Shown here piece by piece: positions 14,899-28,923 of a DNA stretch of 64,000 bases. The stretch is from sequence record OZ196285.1; one strand, written 5' to 3'. Made by a program: the position numbers and the translations under genes. The notes beneath the pieces are model-generated. The model had not been told where the DNA came from and searched no databases. It saw nothing but the letters and a program-made list of their open reading frames with translations. Position 1 is the stretch's first letter. Each line of letters starts with the position of its first letter.

Positions 14899-14922
14899 AA
14901 AAAAAGGACGCCTTAGCGTCCT
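14899..14922 (-). terminator. Rho-independent terminator
   Basis: AGGACGC-loop-GCGTCCT followed by a T run on the minus strand. Confidence 0.75.
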
Positions 14923-15443
14923 TTAGTTTTTTTATATTTCGCTTTCTTATTCTTTCGATTAATCTTGCGAACTTCTTTTCGTTTAGCGATTTTATCAGCT
15001 CTTCGCACTGCATCGTAATCAGCAGCACAAGACGCTGCAAACGCATCAGGCTTGAATACAGGCTCCTGACCTACATAACCCAAGATCGTGCCCTTAGCTT
15101 CGTTATACGCAATGCTAGACTTATGTTTCGGGTCAGGATTGATATCGACGTGAACTTCAAAGCCACGAGGACCGCACATTGGCTTAACGCGCAACGCACA
15201 TTCACCTGCTTTGTAGACTTCATTCATTAGACGACTGCGAATACCGTCAGTCGCGTTCATGTATGCAGGTTCAGTTTCAACCATCTTGAAGACTTGAGCA
15301 CCTTTACTGCCTTCCAAGTGAATTATGATTACAGTCGCATAACTGATTAAATCACTCTTTCGCTTACTGTCACATCCGACATAAATCGTGCTGCTCGGGT
15401 GACTATTGCATATCGCTGTTTCTATTGCTTCCCAATCAAACAT
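14913..15443 (-). CDS. RNase H-like protein, YkuK/DUF458 family
   Basis: IYVGCDS, YATVI..H...GA, RLMNEV, EVHVDIN...KS and AASCAAD motifs; basic C-terminal tail. Confidence 0.85.
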   Translation of the reverse strand: MFDWEAIETAICNSHPSSTIYVGCDSKRKSDLISYATVIIIHLEGSKGAQVFKMVETEPAYMNATDGIRSRLMNEVYKAGECALRVKPMCGPRGFEVHVDINPDPKHKSSIAYNEAKGTILGYVGQEPVFKPDAFAASCAADYDAVRRADKIAKRKEVRKINRKNKKAKYKKTKGR

Positions 15444-15487: not shown

Positions 15488-16936
15488 TTATACTGCGTAC
15501 CGGTCGATACCAACAGTCTTCATCATGATCTTCACTGGCTCAAGCTCGCCATCAAGTAAAGAAGTCAGGATAGATGGACTACAACCCGACACAAGTGCCG
15601 TACCTGCCTCACCCGTTTTCACTGGTACGTTGTCTAGACGACCGCGAATGTTCCAGAACGCTAGTTGCGGCATTTCGTAGCCCGCTGCTGCGTATTGAGC
15701 TTTGATAGCATCAAAGTTTGTTTCTGTGCGGCTTGGCCAACCACCACCGCATTTCGCAGTGTTGAATTCCATGTCAGACATGATCAACATCTTCGTAGGC
15801 ATTTCAGATTGTGGCAAGTTTGCACGCTGCGCACGCTCCAATAGCACTTCGAAACACTTCTGAATATCAGTGCTCATGTTCTCACCAGAACGACGCATGT
15901 TAGCAAGACGCGTTGACAGTGTATCACCAACAAGCTTGTGGAAATGTGGATCGCCTGAGAACGAAATGAACTGATCTTTGAAGATACCTTCGTTACGTTC
16001 AGCTACGTAGACACCAAGAGACATCGCTACGTCCATACAAGTTGTAACAGTGCCCTGTGAATAGCAGCTACCTTGTTCTGAGTTAATCGCACAATTCATT
16101 GAGCCAGACACATCAACAACAGGGATGATGCGCTCGTCAGACCCTTCCATGTAATTCGGAAGTGCTTTCCATTGCTGATCTGCTACACGTGAATCGCCCA
16201 TTCGTACGCTGCGAACAACGTCGTAAGGGAAGACTGCACCTGCATTGATCTTAGCTTCGCCTTTCTCAAGCTTGTTGATGTACTCACCGTAGTTCTCAGC
16301 CGCGTTACGACCGAATGCTTTCTGATAACGCGCAGACGCTACAGATGGCAACTTACCGAAGTCGATCTCGTTCCAGTTCTGTGAACACATTTTCTGTTCA
16401 ACAGTGTCAGACAGCGTAGAAATGACCTTACGCCATTGCTTCGATGTCACGCCAAGCGCCTTGATAGTGCGCTTAAACACGATACCGTTTTTACTCTTCT
16501 CACGAGGGAACCACTTCGCAGCCAGTGCGTTTTTGCCGTTCACGATTGCATTTGCCCATAGAGCAATTGCATCAGACTCAAGAGGAGTACCGAACGCAGT
16601 CACTAAGTCATCGAAACGACCTAATTCTGGCACCTTGTGCATTACAGCACGTGCAACGTCAGGGTTTTTCGCGATAAGTTCAGCGAAAATGCGACGGAAA
16701 GTACCGCGCTCACCTGCACCACCGCGCACGTCGCGAGACCATAGCAAGATACGTGTTGCTAGTTCAGGGTTTTCACCGTATGCGCGATTGAACGCATGTA
16801 CTGAATCTTTGTTACCGCGCATTGCTGCTACAGTAAAGAACAAGTTCAGACACTCGTTACCCGAAGTGCTGTGTGTAATTGCACCGTTTGCTGTACGTGC
16901 GTCGTTTGTGCTCATTGCGTTCATAAATGCTGACAT
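15488..16936 (-). CDS. DUF2828 TROVE-like/vWA protein (Ro60-related RNA-binding protein)
   Basis: T.NGA..H..S, RDVRGGAGER, GRFDDL, AAKW.PR and SVA..RY.KAF motifs; vWA MIDAS VVDVSGSM and MSDMEF. Start moved to 16936 (SD GAGGA). Confidence 0.9.
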   Translation of the reverse strand: MSAFMNAMSTNDARTANGAITHSTSGNECLNLFFTVAAMRGNKDSVHAFNRAYGENPELATRILLWSRDVRGGAGERGTFRRIFAELIAKNPDVARAVMHKVPELGRFDDLVTAFGTPLESDAIALWANAIVNGKNALAAKWFPREKSKNGIVFKRTIKALGVTSKQWRKVISTLSDTVEQKMCSQNWNEIDFGKLPSVASARYQKAFGRNAAENYGEYINKLEKGEAKINAGAVFPYDVVRSVRMGDSRVADQQWKALPNYMEGSDERIIPVVDVSGSMNCAINSEQGSCYSQGTVTTCMDVAMSLGVYVAERNEGIFKDQFISFSGDPHFHKLVGDTLSTRLANMRRSGENMSTDIQKCFEVLLERAQRANLPQSEMPTKMLIMSDMEFNTAKCGGGWPSRTETNFDAIKAQYAAAGYEMPQLAFWNIRGRLDNVPVKTGEAGTALVSGCSPSILTSLLDGELEPVKIMMKTVGIDRYAV

Positions 16937-16984
16937 TGTGTATTTCCTCTTAAATAATATGCTGTAAAATGTCTTATGCGTTGT

Positions 16985-20204: not shown

Positions 20205-20582
20205 TTAGAATAACTTTTCTGTTACCACTAACTCAAGTTCAGAACTCATTCGAGTTTGAGTTGGGTTCATCAAAATTTCATCAATAGAGAATCGAGCACG
20301 CTTATTTGACATGTTCAATGACATATCAAGCCAACGGTCGCGATTTTCATCAGTACCGAACCAACGACGCTGACCGCGAAGCTGTGGGCTGCTACGCTGC
20401 GAGAAGTCATTGACGATAGAATACACGTATCGACCGTGAATAACGATAGCAGACAAGTGTGTAGTCGTCTTAACGACATTCTTAACGATAGTATCAGAAT
20501 GACGCAACTCAAATAGAACAGTCGCGTCGGGCATCTTAGAAATGCGTGCAATTTTGGCAGGTGAAACGAATTTCTCAAACAT
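20205..20582 (-). CDS. Hypothetical protein
   Basis: 125-aa ORF with SD GAGGA. Confidence 0.7.
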   Translation of the reverse strand: MFEKFVSPAKIARISKMPDATVLFELRHSDTIVKNVVKTTTHLSAIVIHGRYVYSIVNDFSQRSSPQLRGQRRWFGTDENRDRWLDMSLNMSNKRARFSIDEILMNPTQTRMSSELELVVTEKLF

Positions 20583-20647
20583 GATTTATTCCTCTTTTGT
20601 TTTACTCAGCATCGCACATTACGACAGTTTTGTAAACCACAAAAACA

Positions 20648-20670
20648 AAAAAGCCCCAATTAAGGGGCTT
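20648..20670 (-). terminator. Terminator ending the tRNA/ncRNA transcript
   Basis: AAGCCCC-TTAATT-GGGGCTTTTTT on the minus strand. Confidence 0.85.
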
Positions 20671-20685
20671 ATTCGTGCAATAATC

Positions 20686-20877
20686 AGACATTCGTGAACA
20701 GTTTTAAAGTCTTTCGCATAAATCACATTTGACTTTCATGTTTAACGATACATGAATCCCTAACGACGAATCGTCAGTCGTGCCTTCGAGCGTATTGCTT
20801 TAAATCACCGAGAAAGCGGCTATGCGTTGCTCTATTCTTTTAAGTAAGTTTTGTTAGTTGGTTGCAGTACAATGTCT
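20686..20877 (-). ncRNA. ~190-nt structured RNA carrying the CWGCAA motif (element A)
   Basis: Closing helix AGACATT/AATGTCT, then GTA-CTGCAA; internal hairpins TTCATG/CATGAA, AAAGTC/GACTTT and GACGATTCGTC; no ORF. Confidence 0.6.
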
Positions 20878-20887
20878 TTTGCAAAAT

Positions 20888-20976
20888 TGGCGGAAGCACT
20901 GGGAGTCGAACCCAGAGAACGCTATTAACGTCCGACACCTTAGCAGGGTGCTGTCATACCATTAGACCATGCTTCC
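20888..20976 (-). tRNA. tRNA-Ser(GCT)
   Basis: Cloverleaf, long variable arm, G73, CCA. Confidence 0.95.
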
Positions 20977-22178: not shown

Positions 22179-22321
22179 AAAGACGATATTTCTCATTTAA
22201 TCTGCACACGGGCTAGACACCATATTTTAATGGTCTGAGTGAAGAACCTCTGCACAACAATCCCGATCTAATTGCGTTATGTGGTGACTGTCACGAGGAA
22301 TCGTATCTTCAAATTAGTATC

Positions 22322-22530
22322 AGGCAATCGCGAAATGTTTTATCGTCTTTTGCATAAATCGCTATTGACTATCTTGTGTATTCTGTACAAGAACATATCA
22401 CATTTTCGCAAGTGAGGCTATCATATCATCACTGATATGCACGTCTTGTAATGCTTGAAGTGACACGTTTCCGCTCACCCGCACCAAGAGCCATCTTTGA
22501 GTTAGAAAGATTAGTTGCAGTACATTGCCT
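22322..22530 (-). ncRNA. ~210-nt multi-hairpin RNA carrying the CWGCAA motif (element B)
   Basis: Closing helix AGGCAAT/ATTGCCT, then GTA-CTGCAAC as in element A; at least five internal hairpins. Confidence 0.6.
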
Positions 22531-22573
22531 AGCGCACGTTTTAGCCGAAGCAAACGTGAACTCTAATTATGTG

Positions 22574-23119: not shown

Positions 23120-23233
23120 ACTGAGTGTCGTTTATACCGCGTCTCCAAGACCTGAGCTACCAACTCAGCGTGAGATTCGAACTCACAACGTTTCTTGTAT
23201 CGAAAGAATTTAAAATTGCTGTAAACACTCAAT
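23120..23233 (-). ncRNA. Circularly permuted tRNA-mimic RNA (YrlA-like) with CAGCAA (element C)
   Basis: 9-bp closing helix ATTGAGTGT/ACACTCAGT, TTA-CAGCAA, canonical T arm GTGAG-TTCGAAT-CTCAC, then CTGAG/CTCAG and GTCT/AGAC hairpins; no anticodon arm and no CCA. Confidence 0.7.
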
Positions 23234-23603: not shown

Positions 23604-23664
23604 GTAATCGTTTTAGTTTTTTTTCAAATAAAAAAAAATTTTAGTTTGTTTGCAGAATGATTAC
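23604..23664 (-). ncRNA. Minimal CWGCAA-motif hairpin (element D)
   Basis: GTAATC/GATTAC helix, ATT-CTGCAAAC, apical T8/A8 hairpin. Confidence 0.5.
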
Positions 23665-24305: not shown

Positions 24306-24382
24306 TGGATGCGTGAGAGTGGATTCGAACCACTGACCTCCGGCTTATGAGACCGACGAGCTGACCGCTGCTCTACTCCGCA
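24306..24382 (-). tRNA. tRNA-Met(CAT), initiator-like body
   Basis: D arm and variable loop resemble tRNA-fMet; one bulged base in the acceptor stem; CCA. Confidence 0.8.
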
Positions 24383-28800: not shown

Positions 28801-28923
28801 TGGTGGAGAGTAGTGGATTCGAACCACTGACCTAAAGACCCATTCGTTTTAATGTTTGCAGCATGAATGCTTTACAGAATTCTTTTAACATTCTTTTGCT
28901 CTACCAAACTGAGCTAACTCTCC
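28801..28923 (-). ncRNA. 123-nt tRNA-like RNA with an expanded anticodon domain carrying CTGCAA (element E)
   Basis: Perfect acceptor GGAGAGT/ACTCTCC-A-CCA, canonical D and T arms, AAAGA/TCTTT stem enclosing about 53 nt. Confidence 0.8.

What the first reader, a model, noticed from the sequence alone, without database searches (positions are those of the whole stretch)
20686..20877. Element A: ~190-nt motif-bearing RNA at the end of the tRNA operon
It fills the gap between tRNA-Ser(GCT) and the operon terminator. A 7-bp helix closes it, followed by GTACTGCAAC, and at least three internal hairpins are visible. It shares 10 nt and its geometry with element B but is otherwise unrelated.
Basis: seen in the sequence. 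Interest (0 to 1): 0.65.

Follow-up and report, generated by a model that had tools for sequence, protein, structure and literature searches.

The report
Phage Y-like RNA with Ro60 handle
Element A is a real, conserved 192-nt structured non-coding RNA at the end of the tRNA operon of a KVP40-like Vibrio phage; it has a paralogue 1.6 kb upstream and carries a short "handle" that probably docks it onto the phage's own Ro60-like RNA-binding protein.

Summary
At window 20686-20877 (minus strand), between tRNA-Ser(GCT) and an intrinsic terminator, a 7-bp helix (AGACAUU/AAUGUCU) closes a 192-nt RNA that starts with GUACUGCAAC.

The window is Vibrio phage F86. The element is conserved in about 50 KVP40-like vibriophages. 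It is not "otherwise unrelated" to element B (22322-22530). The two are paralogues that share a ~60-nt 3' domain, and both the closing helix and a 4-bp helix around a conserved 25-nt loop covary. Rfam has no match.

The terminal module is a 6-7 bp helix, then xUx, then C(A/U)GCAA, with the 3' strand followed by UG. It recurs in four RNAs of this tRNA array and in the 5' leader of a gene 3.75 kb away on the same strand. That gene encodes a DUF2828/DUF7788 protein whose predicted fold matches only Ro60/TROVE structures. Four distant phages with this protein also carry handle RNAs beside the gene or among their tRNAs (Aeh1, a fifth, has a single hit); T4 has neither.

Best reading: a Y-RNA-like partner of a phage Ro60-like protein, with a clade-specific effector body. 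Binding and function are inferred, not shown. Earlier notes of this scan on the same genome had already flagged the handle/Ro60-like link; I retested it here.

The parts
20686..20877 (-). Element A, the whole RNA body from the 5' strand to the 3' strand of the closing helix (192 nt)
   Evidence: Sequence; conserved in 6E35.1a, K566, KVP40, VH7D, phi-ST2, V09, ValKK3, nt-1 and 1.081.O
20888..20976 (-). tRNA-Ser(GCT), immediately upstream; a 10-nt spacer (20878-20887) separates it from A
   Evidence: ARAGORN and Rfam
20871..20877 (-). P1 5' strand, AGACAUU
   Evidence: 100% paired in 18 family members; 3 of 7 pairs show changes on both sides
20861..20870 (-). Unpaired handle motif GUA-CUGCAA-C (xUx + C(A/U/C)GCAA)
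   Evidence: U, C and GCAA are invariant in the family
20788..20832 (-). A-specific domain: outer stem GAGC/GCUC enclosing the mini-hairpin GCCG-CUUUCU-CGGU (20807-20820)
   Evidence: Outer stem is GAGU/ACUC in 6E35.1a. The mini-hairpin middle pair is C-G in 3 and U-A in 6 of 9 sequences
20760..20777 (-). Hairpin CUGACGA-UUCG-UCGUUAG (UNCG tetraloop)
   Evidence: 6E35.1a/K566 have CUAUCAA-CUUG-UUGGUAG: two pairs changed on both sides, one on one side
20735..20756 (-). Last hairpin, UUCAUG-N10-CAUGAA, just 5' of AGUCAA
   Evidence: A hairpin at the same place has a different sequence in KVP40-type A and in all B copies
20694..20734 (-). Shared 3' domain: AGUCAA (20729-20734), then helix Px GUGA (20723-20726) / UCAC (20694-20697) closing the conserved 25-nt loop UUUAUGCGAAAGACUUUAAAACUGU
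   Evidence: Px is 100% paired; 2 of 4 pairs have three pair types each. Model R1 finds only A and B in the window
20686..20692 (-). P1 3' strand, AAUGUCU, followed by G
20651..20670 (-). Intrinsic terminator hairpin plus U tract, 15 nt after P1
   Evidence: The hairpin sits at the same position with a different, self-complementary sequence in 6E35.1a and KVP40
22322..22530 (-). Element B, paralogue of A, directly after tRNA-Arg(UCU); closing helix AGGCAAU/AUUGCCU
15488..16936 (-). Gene for the Ro60-like protein (482 aa; DUF2828 + DUF7788; MIDAS DxSxS)
   Evidence: Pfam; invariant D-V-S-G-S-M; AF2 model and Foldseek; PHROG 850 'RNA-binding protein'
16932..16974 (-). 5' leader of that gene: AGACAUU-UUA-CAGCAU ... 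AAUGUC. This is the same helix sequence as A's P1, and its 3' strand contains the AUG start codon
   Evidence: Read directly; the same arrangement occurs in KVP40
23123..23230 (-). Another handle-bearing RNA in the tRNA array (GAGUGU-UUA-CAGCAA ... ACACUC-AG)
23604..23664 (-). Short (61-nt) handle-bearing RNA (GUAAUC-AUU-CUGCAA ... GAUUAC-UG)
   Evidence: sub-threshold Rfam RF01414 match, 29.1 bits

Best explanation
Element A is a non-coding RNA gene co-transcribed with the tRNAs of phage F86 and cut out of the operon transcript. It has two modules.

(1) A terminal handle. This is a 6-7 bp helix formed by the two ends, followed on the 5' side by three nucleotides with a central U and the unpaired box C(A/U)GCAA. 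On the 3' side the helix is followed by UG. This handle is the predicted docking site for the phage's own Ro60-like ring protein (DUF2828/DUF7788, window 15488-16936). The same handle, with the same helix sequence as in A, lies over the start codon in that gene's leader. The protein would therefore also limit its own translation there.

(2) A structured body of about 170 nt. It holds several covarying hairpins and a 3' domain (AGUCAA plus a 4-bp helix closing a conserved 25-nt loop). That domain is shared only with paralogue B and is restricted to KVP40-like vibriophages.

By analogy with Y RNAs, the body would act as the effector part. It would tether the protein to, or gate it against, another host or phage factor, for example an exoribonuclease or a defence protein.

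Shown here: the RNA's conservation, the covariation, the paralogy with B, the handle family, the Ro60-like fold and the genomic co-occurrence. Inferred: processing, binding and the role of the body.
For: - Identity and conservation: the window is Vibrio phage F86. A is conserved at the same place in 6E35.1a and KVP40. Both A and B occur in all sampled KVP40-like phages.
- Covariation: P1 and Px are 100% paired in 18 sequences, with 3/7 and 2/4 pairs changed on both sides. No shuffle out of 500 reaches the observed score, and slid controls collapse to 22-45% paired. 18 of 45 predicted pairs in B have compensatory changes.
- Handle specificity: a strict handle scan gives five hits in the 64-kb window, all on the minus strand between 16.8 and 23.7 kb. 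It gives none in about 75 kb of unrelated viral contigs.
- The protein: DUF2828+DUF7788. The AF2 model has pLDDT 79. The 12 best PDB matches (ranks 1-13) are all Ro60/TROVE over the full length, E 1e-8 to 2e-4, TM 0.45-0.58, including the Thermus phage phiLo Ro60.
- Co-occurrence: four distant phages with 42-50% identical proteins carry handle RNAs next to the gene or in the adjoining tRNA array (L022, L023, L024, Bas63); Aeh1, a fifth, has one strict hit in its tRNA array plus two scattered hits at background level. T4 has no homologue and no handle in its tRNA array.
- Leader mimic of A's own P1.
- Precedent: phiLo Ro60 binds two phage Y-like RNAs and host PNPase (PMC12135203). Bas63 gp130, a 42.5% identical homologue, counters the ppl defence and sits upstream of tRNAs (bioRxiv 10.1101/2024.10.10.617714).
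- A lies 3.75 kb from the gene on the same strand, within the 4-kb same-strand rule used for bacterial Y RNAs (PMC4201824).
Against:
- The canonical Ro60-binding motifs (GGUCCGA; GNCGAAN0-1G) are absent from the handle, and there is no Rfam Y_RNA or YrlA match even at E<=10.
- The protein is only a structural relative of Ro60 (12-17% identity, TM about 0.5).
- Co-occurrence was checked in a handful of genomes, not statistically across the 710 phage records that carry the protein.
- The leader helix has the same sequence in F86 and KVP40, so it gives no covariation. It is rearranged in the 6E35-like phage D491s.
- Nothing indicates what the body binds.
Confidence: 0.55

Rival explanations
1. 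A is a processed stable RNA that acts independently of the Ro60-like protein. It would be a functional analogue of the T4 rnaC/rnaD species. The terminal helix+box would then be a processing or stability determinant read by host RNases or another factor.
For: A and B have the same operon position as T4 rnaD/rnaC (after tRNA-Arg(UCU) and at the operon end). The handle lies at the exact ends, where maturation must occur. No binding data exist.
Against: T4 has no handle in its tRNA array and no DUF2828 protein. The handle tracks the protein gene in unrelated phages, even where no tRNAs are present (L022, L023). The handle copy in the protein's own leader is hard to explain as a processing signal.
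Confidence: 0.2
2. A is a cis-acting leader (riboswitch or attenuator). Together with the terminator at 20670-20651 it would control read-through into the downstream ORF (20582-20205, 125 aa, PHROG 20301).
For: Its geometry is a large structured domain, then a terminator, then an RBS and ORF on the same strand.
Against: Paralogue B has the same conserved core but is followed by more non-coding sequence and tRNA-Met, not by a terminator plus ORF. The terminator stem does not overlap P1, and it changes sequence freely while the body is conserved. There is no Rfam riboswitch match.
Confidence: 0.06
3. A is a self-cleaving or otherwise catalytic RNA that helps to process the long tRNA operon transcript.
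For: It has a multi-helix fold with stable tetraloops and highly conserved unpaired junction nucleotides. It sits between units that must be separated.
Against: There is no match to any ribozyme family in Rfam at E<=10. The similarities I recalled to the group I S element and to RNase P CR-I are short and were not backed by any model. The short handle RNAs (56-66 nt) share the conserved box but have no room for a catalytic core.
Confidence: 0.05
4. A is not a functional unit: merely a spacer, a DNA-level element or a mis-annotated small ORF (VPHF86_0291).
For: MFE is no better than shuffles. The record annotates a 35-aa CDS at 20619-20726.
Against: Compensatory changes keep helices in the tRNA-strand orientation, including G-U pairs. 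The annotated ORF spans the terminator and is not kept in KVP40. A and B are kept in every relative sampled.
Confidence: 0.03

Closest known systems
Y RNAs / Y-like RNAs of Ro60 proteins (bacterial YrlA, Yrn1; Yrl1 and Yrl2 of Thermus phage phiLo)
   Same: Modular ncRNA whose 5' and 3' ends form a stem. It is encoded within 4 kb of, and on the same strand as, a Ro60-fold protein gene. It is embedded among or resembles tRNAs, and several paralogous RNAs occur per genome (PMC4201824, PMC12135203).
   Different: The docking motif differs: xUx-C(A/U)GCAA beside a plain helix, instead of a bulged helix with GGUCCGA or GNCGAA. A has no tRNA-like domain. A is much larger (192 nt; up to ~270 nt in relatives). 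The protein belongs to DUF2828/DUF7788, not Pfam TROVE. There is no Rfam match.
Bacteriophage T4 species 1 and 2 RNAs (rnaC, rnaD)
   Same: Small stable RNAs of unknown role inside the tRNA operon of a T4-like phage. rnaD directly follows tRNA-Arg(UCU), as B does, and rnaC ends the operon, as A does (PMC3014915).
   Different: No sequence or model similarity (best R1 hit in T4 is 17 bits, E 0.5, elsewhere in the genome). The T4 RNAs have tRNA-like 3' ends (GGUUCGAAUCC in rnaC) and no handle. T4 has no DUF2828 protein.
Class I RNAs of dictyostelid amoebae (Rfam RF01414)
   Same: A short stem joins the two ends. An unpaired conserved box sits directly 3' of the 5' stem strand (Rfam consensus CCUUACAGCAA, against GUACUGCAA in A). 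A 5' G pairs with a C that is followed by UG. The rest is variable (PMC7919456).
   Different: Class I RNAs are 42-65 nt, eukaryotic, and have their own promoter element. Their known binder is an RRM protein. A gives no RF01414 hit. Even the short phage handle RNAs score below the gathering threshold (29.1 and 21.4 against 41.5 bits).

Membership tests
Y RNA (partner RNA of a Ro60-fold protein) | Encoded close to (<=4 kb) and on the same strand as the Ro60 orthologue | tested here: met
   A at 20686-20877 (-); gene at 15488-16936 (-); 3.75 kb apart. Criterion from PMC4201824.
Y RNA (partner RNA of a Ro60-fold protein) | Stem formed by the 5' and 3' ends of the RNA | tested here: met
   P1 is 7 bp, 100% paired in 18 sequences, with 3 covarying pairs.
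Y RNA (partner RNA of a Ro60-fold protein) | Conserved Ro-binding sequence in that stem (GGUCCGA or GNCGAAN0-1G) | tested here: not met
   The handle is AGACAUU + GUACUGCAA. Only A-type copies have CACGAAUG/CUCGAAUG on the 3' side, and B copies lack it.
Y RNA (partner RNA of a Ro60-fold protein) | Match to the Rfam Y_RNA / YrlA models, or a tRNA-like domain | tested here: not met
   No such match at E<=10 in 20560-20900. ARAGORN finds nothing inside A.
Y RNA (partner RNA of a Ro60-fold protein) | Physical binding to the Ro60-like protein | not testable with these tools
   Needs co-immunoprecipitation or a gel shift.
Phage 'handle' RNAs that accompany DUF2828 genes (undescribed family) | 6-7 bp terminal helix starting with G, then xUx, then C(A/U/C)GCAA; 3' strand ends in C followed by (U/A)G | tested here: met
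   aaaGACATT GTACTGCAAC ... AATGTCtg. The same frame occurs in Bas63, L022-L024, Aeh1 and all KVP40-like phages.
Phage 'handle' RNAs that accompany DUF2828 genes (undescribed family) | Genome also encodes the DUF2828/DUF7788 protein; absent where the protein is absent | tested here: met
   F86, KVP40, Aeh1, Bas63 and L022-L024 have both. T4 has neither. The sample is small.
A/B-type RNA (this clade-specific family) | 3' domain: hairpin, AGUCAA, 4-bp helix around the loop UUNANGNNAAAGACNNNAAAACNNU, one nucleotide, then the P1 3' strand | tested here: met
   R1 scores 74 bits, E 2e-14. Found twice in nt-1. Absent from Aeh1, Bas63 and T4.
Dictyostelium Class I RNA (RF01414) | Score at or above the Rfam gathering threshold; length 42-65 nt | tested here: not met
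   No hit for A, and A is 192 nt. The short sister RNAs reach only 29.1 and 21.4 bits against 41.5.
T4 rnaC/rnaD | Sequence or structure homology to the T4 RNAs | tested here: not met
   No similarity by eye. R1 finds nothing in the T4 tRNA region.
Ro60/TROVE protein (for the proposed partner) | HEAT-repeat ring plus a vWA domain with a MIDAS DxSxS motif | tested here: met
   The model is helical to about residue 280, then alpha/beta. D294-V-S-G-S-M is invariant in 30 homologues. Full-length Foldseek matches go to Ro60 only. Pfam TROVE itself does not hit.

The most novel reading that the evidence does not exclude
A and B are effector RNAs of an undescribed, widespread phage ribonucleoprotein. 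A Ro60-fold DUF2828 protein would read a helix + xUx-CAGCAA handle, autoregulate through a handle copy in its own leader, and use different RNA bodies (from 56-nt minimal RNAs to the 190-270-nt A/B type) to redirect host RNA decay or to neutralise defence systems such as ppl. The same handle frame in Dictyostelium Class I RNAs would then point to a shared, still unknown protein-RNA recognition code.
Probability: 0.3. Interest if true: 0.85.

Novelty: new variant of a known kind. Interest (0 to 1): 0.66.

Why it matters
Phage-encoded Ro60 homologues have only just begun to be studied. One structure exists with two Y-like RNAs. One genetic hit shows that the Bas63 homologue counters a bacterial defence, and its RNA partners are only guessed at.

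Element A and its relatives supply concrete, testable partner RNAs for a protein family found in at least 710 sequenced phages. They also define a simple recognition module that can be mutated.

The large A/B bodies are unannotated structured RNAs in a well-known phage group (KVP40), where gene callers currently place spurious small ORFs. They also show that the unexplained 'extra stable RNAs in the tRNA operon', known from T4 for fifty years, are a recurring feature of T4-like phages that comes in non-homologous forms.

Tried and rejected
- Rfam at gathering and at E<=10 gave only tRNAs and terminator-like noise.
- T4 rnaC/rnaD homology: none.
- An IMG/VR scan with the 5' motif returned ten loci. 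Nine lacked the 3' block and are chance matches.
- An IMG/VR scan with the 3' block returned only KVP40 and VH7D.
- The metagenome scan with the 3' block returned two hits inside a ferredoxin-like ORF, which are chance matches.
- I recalled similarities of AAGAUAGUC to the group I S element and of GAAAGUC to RNase P CR-I. No model match backs either, so I dropped them.
- The pseudoknot AGUC/GAC is inconclusive: three pairs are invariant, one covaries and two are mostly unpaired.
- RNAalifold on three near-identical A sequences gave a long-range fold that conflicts with the covarying Px helix, so I did not use it. MAFFT misaligns the middle of A between F86-type and KVP40-type copies.
- MFE z-score is not significant.
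- The KVP40 genome paper is not held.
- The literature on DUF2828 holds nothing relevant.
- I did not test whether dictyostelids encode a DUF2828 protein.

Full report
**What is there**

The window is Vibrio phage F86, a KVP40-like member of the Straboviridae (100% identity to OZ196285.1). A long tRNA array (25 ARAGORN calls, 26 Rfam tRNA matches) runs on the minus strand from about 28.4 kb down to 20.9 kb.

- The last tRNA, tRNA-Ser(GCT), ends at 20888.
- Ten nucleotides later the reported element starts: AGACAUU (20877-20871), then GUACUGCAAC (20870-20861).
- About 170 nt follow, and AAUGUCU (20692-20686) closes a 7-bp helix.
- Fifteen nucleotides further on lies a terminator-like hairpin with a U tract (20670-20651).
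- After that come an RBS and a 125-aa ORF of unknown function.

**Is it more than chance?**

Not by thermodynamics. The MFE of -38.8 kcal/mol has z = -0.33 against dinucleotide shuffles. A motif-anchored perfect 7-bp helix turns up about 6.6 times in a shuffled window. The evidence comes from relatives.

- The ~300-nt gap between tRNA-Ser(GCT) and the next ORF is kept in 6E35.1a and KVP40. Both ends of the element are nearly invariant, the middle carries insertions, and the terminator changes sequence while staying self-complementary.
- Indels of 1, 7 and more than 50 nt rule out a coding constraint.
- The record's 35-aa CDS VPHF86_0291 (20619-20726) spans the terminator and is not kept in KVP40, so it is most likely spurious.

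**Relation to element B**

Element B lies at 22322-22530 (-), directly after tRNA-Arg(UCU). It is not 'otherwise unrelated'.

- Besides the 10-mer, A and B share the block AGUCAA-N4-GAUUUAUGCRAAAGAC-NN-UAAAAC-NN-UUC-N-CG just before the closing helix.
- A 24-nt degenerate version of this block matches only these two places in the window, with none in 100 shuffles.
- Both elements are present, in the same syntenic positions, in 6E35.1a, K566, KVP40, VH7D, phi-ST2, V09, ValKK3, nt-1 and 1.081.O. In 1.081.O the A copy is a shortened variant that lacks the 3' block.
- BLAST finds the B-type block in 50 phage records, all vibriophages.

**Structure**

I aligned 18 A and B copies (A7) and counted pairs for three candidate helices.

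- The closing helix P1 is paired in every sequence, and three of its seven pairs change on both sides:
  - A-type: AGACAUU/AAUGUCU
  - B-type: AGACAAU/AUUGUCU
  - F86 B: AGGCAAU/AUUGCCU
  - 1.081.O B: AGAUAAU/AUUAUCU
- A second helix, Px, is also paired in every sequence. Its forms include GUGA/UCAC, GAGA/UCUC, CCGA/UCGG, GCGA/UCGC and GCGA/UCGU. Two of its four pairs show three pair types each.
- Px closes a 25-nt loop that is almost invariant. It is separated from the 3' strand of P1 by one nucleotide, so the two helices can stack.
- None of 500 column shuffles reaches the observed covariation score. Sliding the partners by 1-3 columns drops pairing from 92.5% to 22-45%.
- A possible pseudoknot between AGUC and the loop's GAC is inconclusive.
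- Among ten B copies, 18 of 45 predicted pairs have compensatory changes, including a hairpin capped by a GNRA tetraloop.

In A itself three more helices have comparative support.

- The UUCG-capped hairpin (20777-20760) becomes CUAUCAA-CUUG-UUGGUAG in 6E35.1a and K566.
- The mini-hairpin GCCG/CGGU alternates with GCUG/CAGU.
- The outer stem GAGC/GCUC becomes GAGU/ACUC.

G-U pairs and the tetraloops fit only the tRNA strand.

**Distribution**

A covariance model of the shared 3' domain (R1) finds only A (74 bits) and B (91.6 bits) in the window. It finds both copies in nt-1, and nothing in Aeh1, Bas63 or T4. Pattern scans of IMG/VR and of JGI metagenomes add no further true members. The A/B body is thus specific to KVP40-like vibriophages.

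**The handle and the protein**

After I had reached the paralogue and covariation result, notes from earlier runs of this scan on the same genome suggested two things. The helix+box might be shared by other RNAs, and it might be linked to a Ro60-like DUF2828 protein. I treated this as a lead and tested it.

(a) The protein.
- The ORF at 15488-16936 (-) matches Pfam DUF2828 and DUF7788 and PHROG 850 'RNA-binding protein'.
- An AlphaFold model built on 30 homologues has pLDDT 79.1 and pTM 0.78.
- Its 12 best PDB matches (ranks 1-13) are all Ro60/TROVE proteins aligned over the full length. They include the Thermus phage phiLo Ro60 and the frog, human and Deinococcus proteins (E 1.3e-8 to 2e-4, TM 0.45-0.58). 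vWA/MIDAS domains follow lower in the list.
- D-V-S-G-S-M, a MIDAS DxSxS motif, is invariant in the family.

(b) Handle specificity.
- I defined a strict handle as a 6-bp helix starting with G, then xUx, then C(A/C/U)GCA(A/U), with the 3' strand followed by (U/A)G.
- It occurs five times in the 64-kb window, all on the minus strand between 16.8 and 23.7 kb: A, B, two shorter RNAs (23123-23230, 23604-23664) and the leader of the protein gene.

(c) The leader.
- The leader reads AGACAUU-UUA-CAGCAU...AAGAGGAAAUACAC-AAUGUC.
- This is the same helix sequence as A's P1, and its 3' strand contains the AUG.
- KVP40 has the same arrangement. The 6E35-like phage D491s, where a homing endonuclease gene sits upstream, has a rearranged version with CUUACAGCAAUG over the start codon.

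(d) Co-occurrence.
- Three metagenomic phage contigs encode proteins about 50% identical. Each has handle RNAs in intergenic gaps on the gene's strand, and in two of them the RNA lies immediately downstream of the gene with no tRNAs nearby.
- Bas63 has four handle RNAs within 1.2 kb downstream of gene 130, inside its tRNA array.
- Aeh1 has one between two tRNAs.
- T4 has no homologue at E<=1. Its only two strict-handle hits in 169 kb lie far from the tRNA region.

**Context from papers**
- Bacterial Y RNAs are modular. Their terminal stem binds Ro60, they lie within 4 kb on the same strand, and they often mimic tRNAs (PMC4201824).
- The phiLo phage Ro60 binds two phage-encoded Y-like RNAs and assembles with host PNPase (PMC12135203).
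- Bas63 gp130 is described as structurally Ro60-like and as the counter to the ppl defence. The authors guess that some neighbouring 'tRNAs' are its Y RNAs (bioRxiv 10.1101/2024.10.10.617714). bas63_0130 is 42.5% identical to the F86 protein.
- T4's RNAC and RNAD remain without a known role (PMC3014915).
- The Rfam consensus for Dictyostelium Class I RNAs is a 6-bp stem, CCUUACAGCAA, a variable region, the 3' stem strand and then UG. It gives sub-threshold matches to the short phage handle RNAs (29.1 and 21.4 bits against a gathering score of 41.5) and none to A. The defining features of that class are described in PMC7919456.

**Interpretation**

Shown: A is a conserved, structured, non-coding RNA gene. 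It is a paralogue of B and carries a terminal module that it shares with other RNAs of the array and with the leader of a Ro60-fold protein gene. This module and this protein travel together in distant phages.

Inferred: A is cut from the tRNA operon transcript. The protein binds the handle. The A/B body is an effector part, either a tether or a gate, possibly towards a host exoribonuclease or a defence protein. I put about 0.55 on this full reading.

The main rival is a stable RNA that works without the protein, with the handle serving as a maturation signal (0.2). Leader/riboswitch, ribozyme and 'no function' readings are each unlikely, for the reasons given under rivals.

A does not qualify as a canonical Y RNA. 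The known Ro-binding motifs, a tRNA-like domain and any model match are all absent. I therefore file it as a new variant of the Ro60/Y-RNA kind, not as a member of the YrlA family.

**Limits**
- There is no transcript or binding evidence.
- Co-occurrence was checked in a few genomes only.
- The middle of A is not reliably alignable between F86-type and KVP40-type copies.
- What the body binds is unknown.

Noticed in passing
window 16932-16974 (-): The leader of the Ro60-like gene carries a handle copy whose helix sequence is the same as element A's P1, and the start codon lies in the 3' strand. This looks like an autoregulatory operator. KVP40 has the same arrangement (L033:411-450).
   Followed up: partly
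window 22179-22318 (-): The stretch between element B and tRNA-Met holds further blocks conserved between F86 and KVP40 (for example GGUUCNUCNCUCAGACCAU...AUGGUGUC.AGCCCGUGUGC.GAUUAAAUGAG). They have hairpin potential and could be another RNA or a promoter/processing region.
   Followed up: no
window 22540-22570 (-): A small hairpin with a UUCG tetraloop (GCUUCGGC) sits between tRNA-Arg(UCU) and element B. A similar GCUUCGGC hairpin sits there in KVP40, phi-ST2 and 1.081.O.
   Followed up: no
window 28804-28923 (-): An Rfam tRNA match (57.6 bits) is spread over 120 nt, so this is a tRNA gene with an insert of about 48 nt. ARAGORN does not call it.
   Followed up: no
window 24310-24381 (-): A tRNA found by Rfam (53.5 bits) but not by ARAGORN.
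   Followed up: no
window 14913-15443 (-): A PF04308 RNaseH-like protein gene lies immediately downstream of the Ro60-like gene. KVP40 has the same pair (KVP40.0299/0300), so it could be a functional partner.
   Followed up: no
window 20619-20726 (-): The annotated CDS VPHF86_0291 (35 aa, GTG start) overlaps the 3' domain of element A and the terminator and is probably not a gene. Several other small 'hypothetical protein' CDS in the tRNA arrays of the OZ19xxxx records overlap tRNAs or these RNAs.
   Followed up: partly
L017:6246-6400 (+) (Vibrio phage 1.081.O): The A orthologue is shortened to about 150 nt. It keeps the handle (with a U-G pair) and the A-specific UAGCUGCUUUCUCAGCGAU hairpin, but has lost the AGUCAA/Px 3' domain.
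   Followed up: partly
L034:350-480 (+) (Vibrio phage D491s): A homing endonuclease gene is inserted just upstream of the Ro60-like gene. The leader is rearranged so that the box CUUACAGCAAUG overlaps the start codon.
   Followed up: no
L025:7770-8602 (+) (Escherichia phage Bas63): Four unannotated handle RNAs (56-124 nt) lie among the tRNAs just downstream of gp130. All are framed by gaaGACC...GGUCugg. Two small reverse-strand CDS (bas63_0137/0138) overlap them and are probably spurious.
   Followed up: partly
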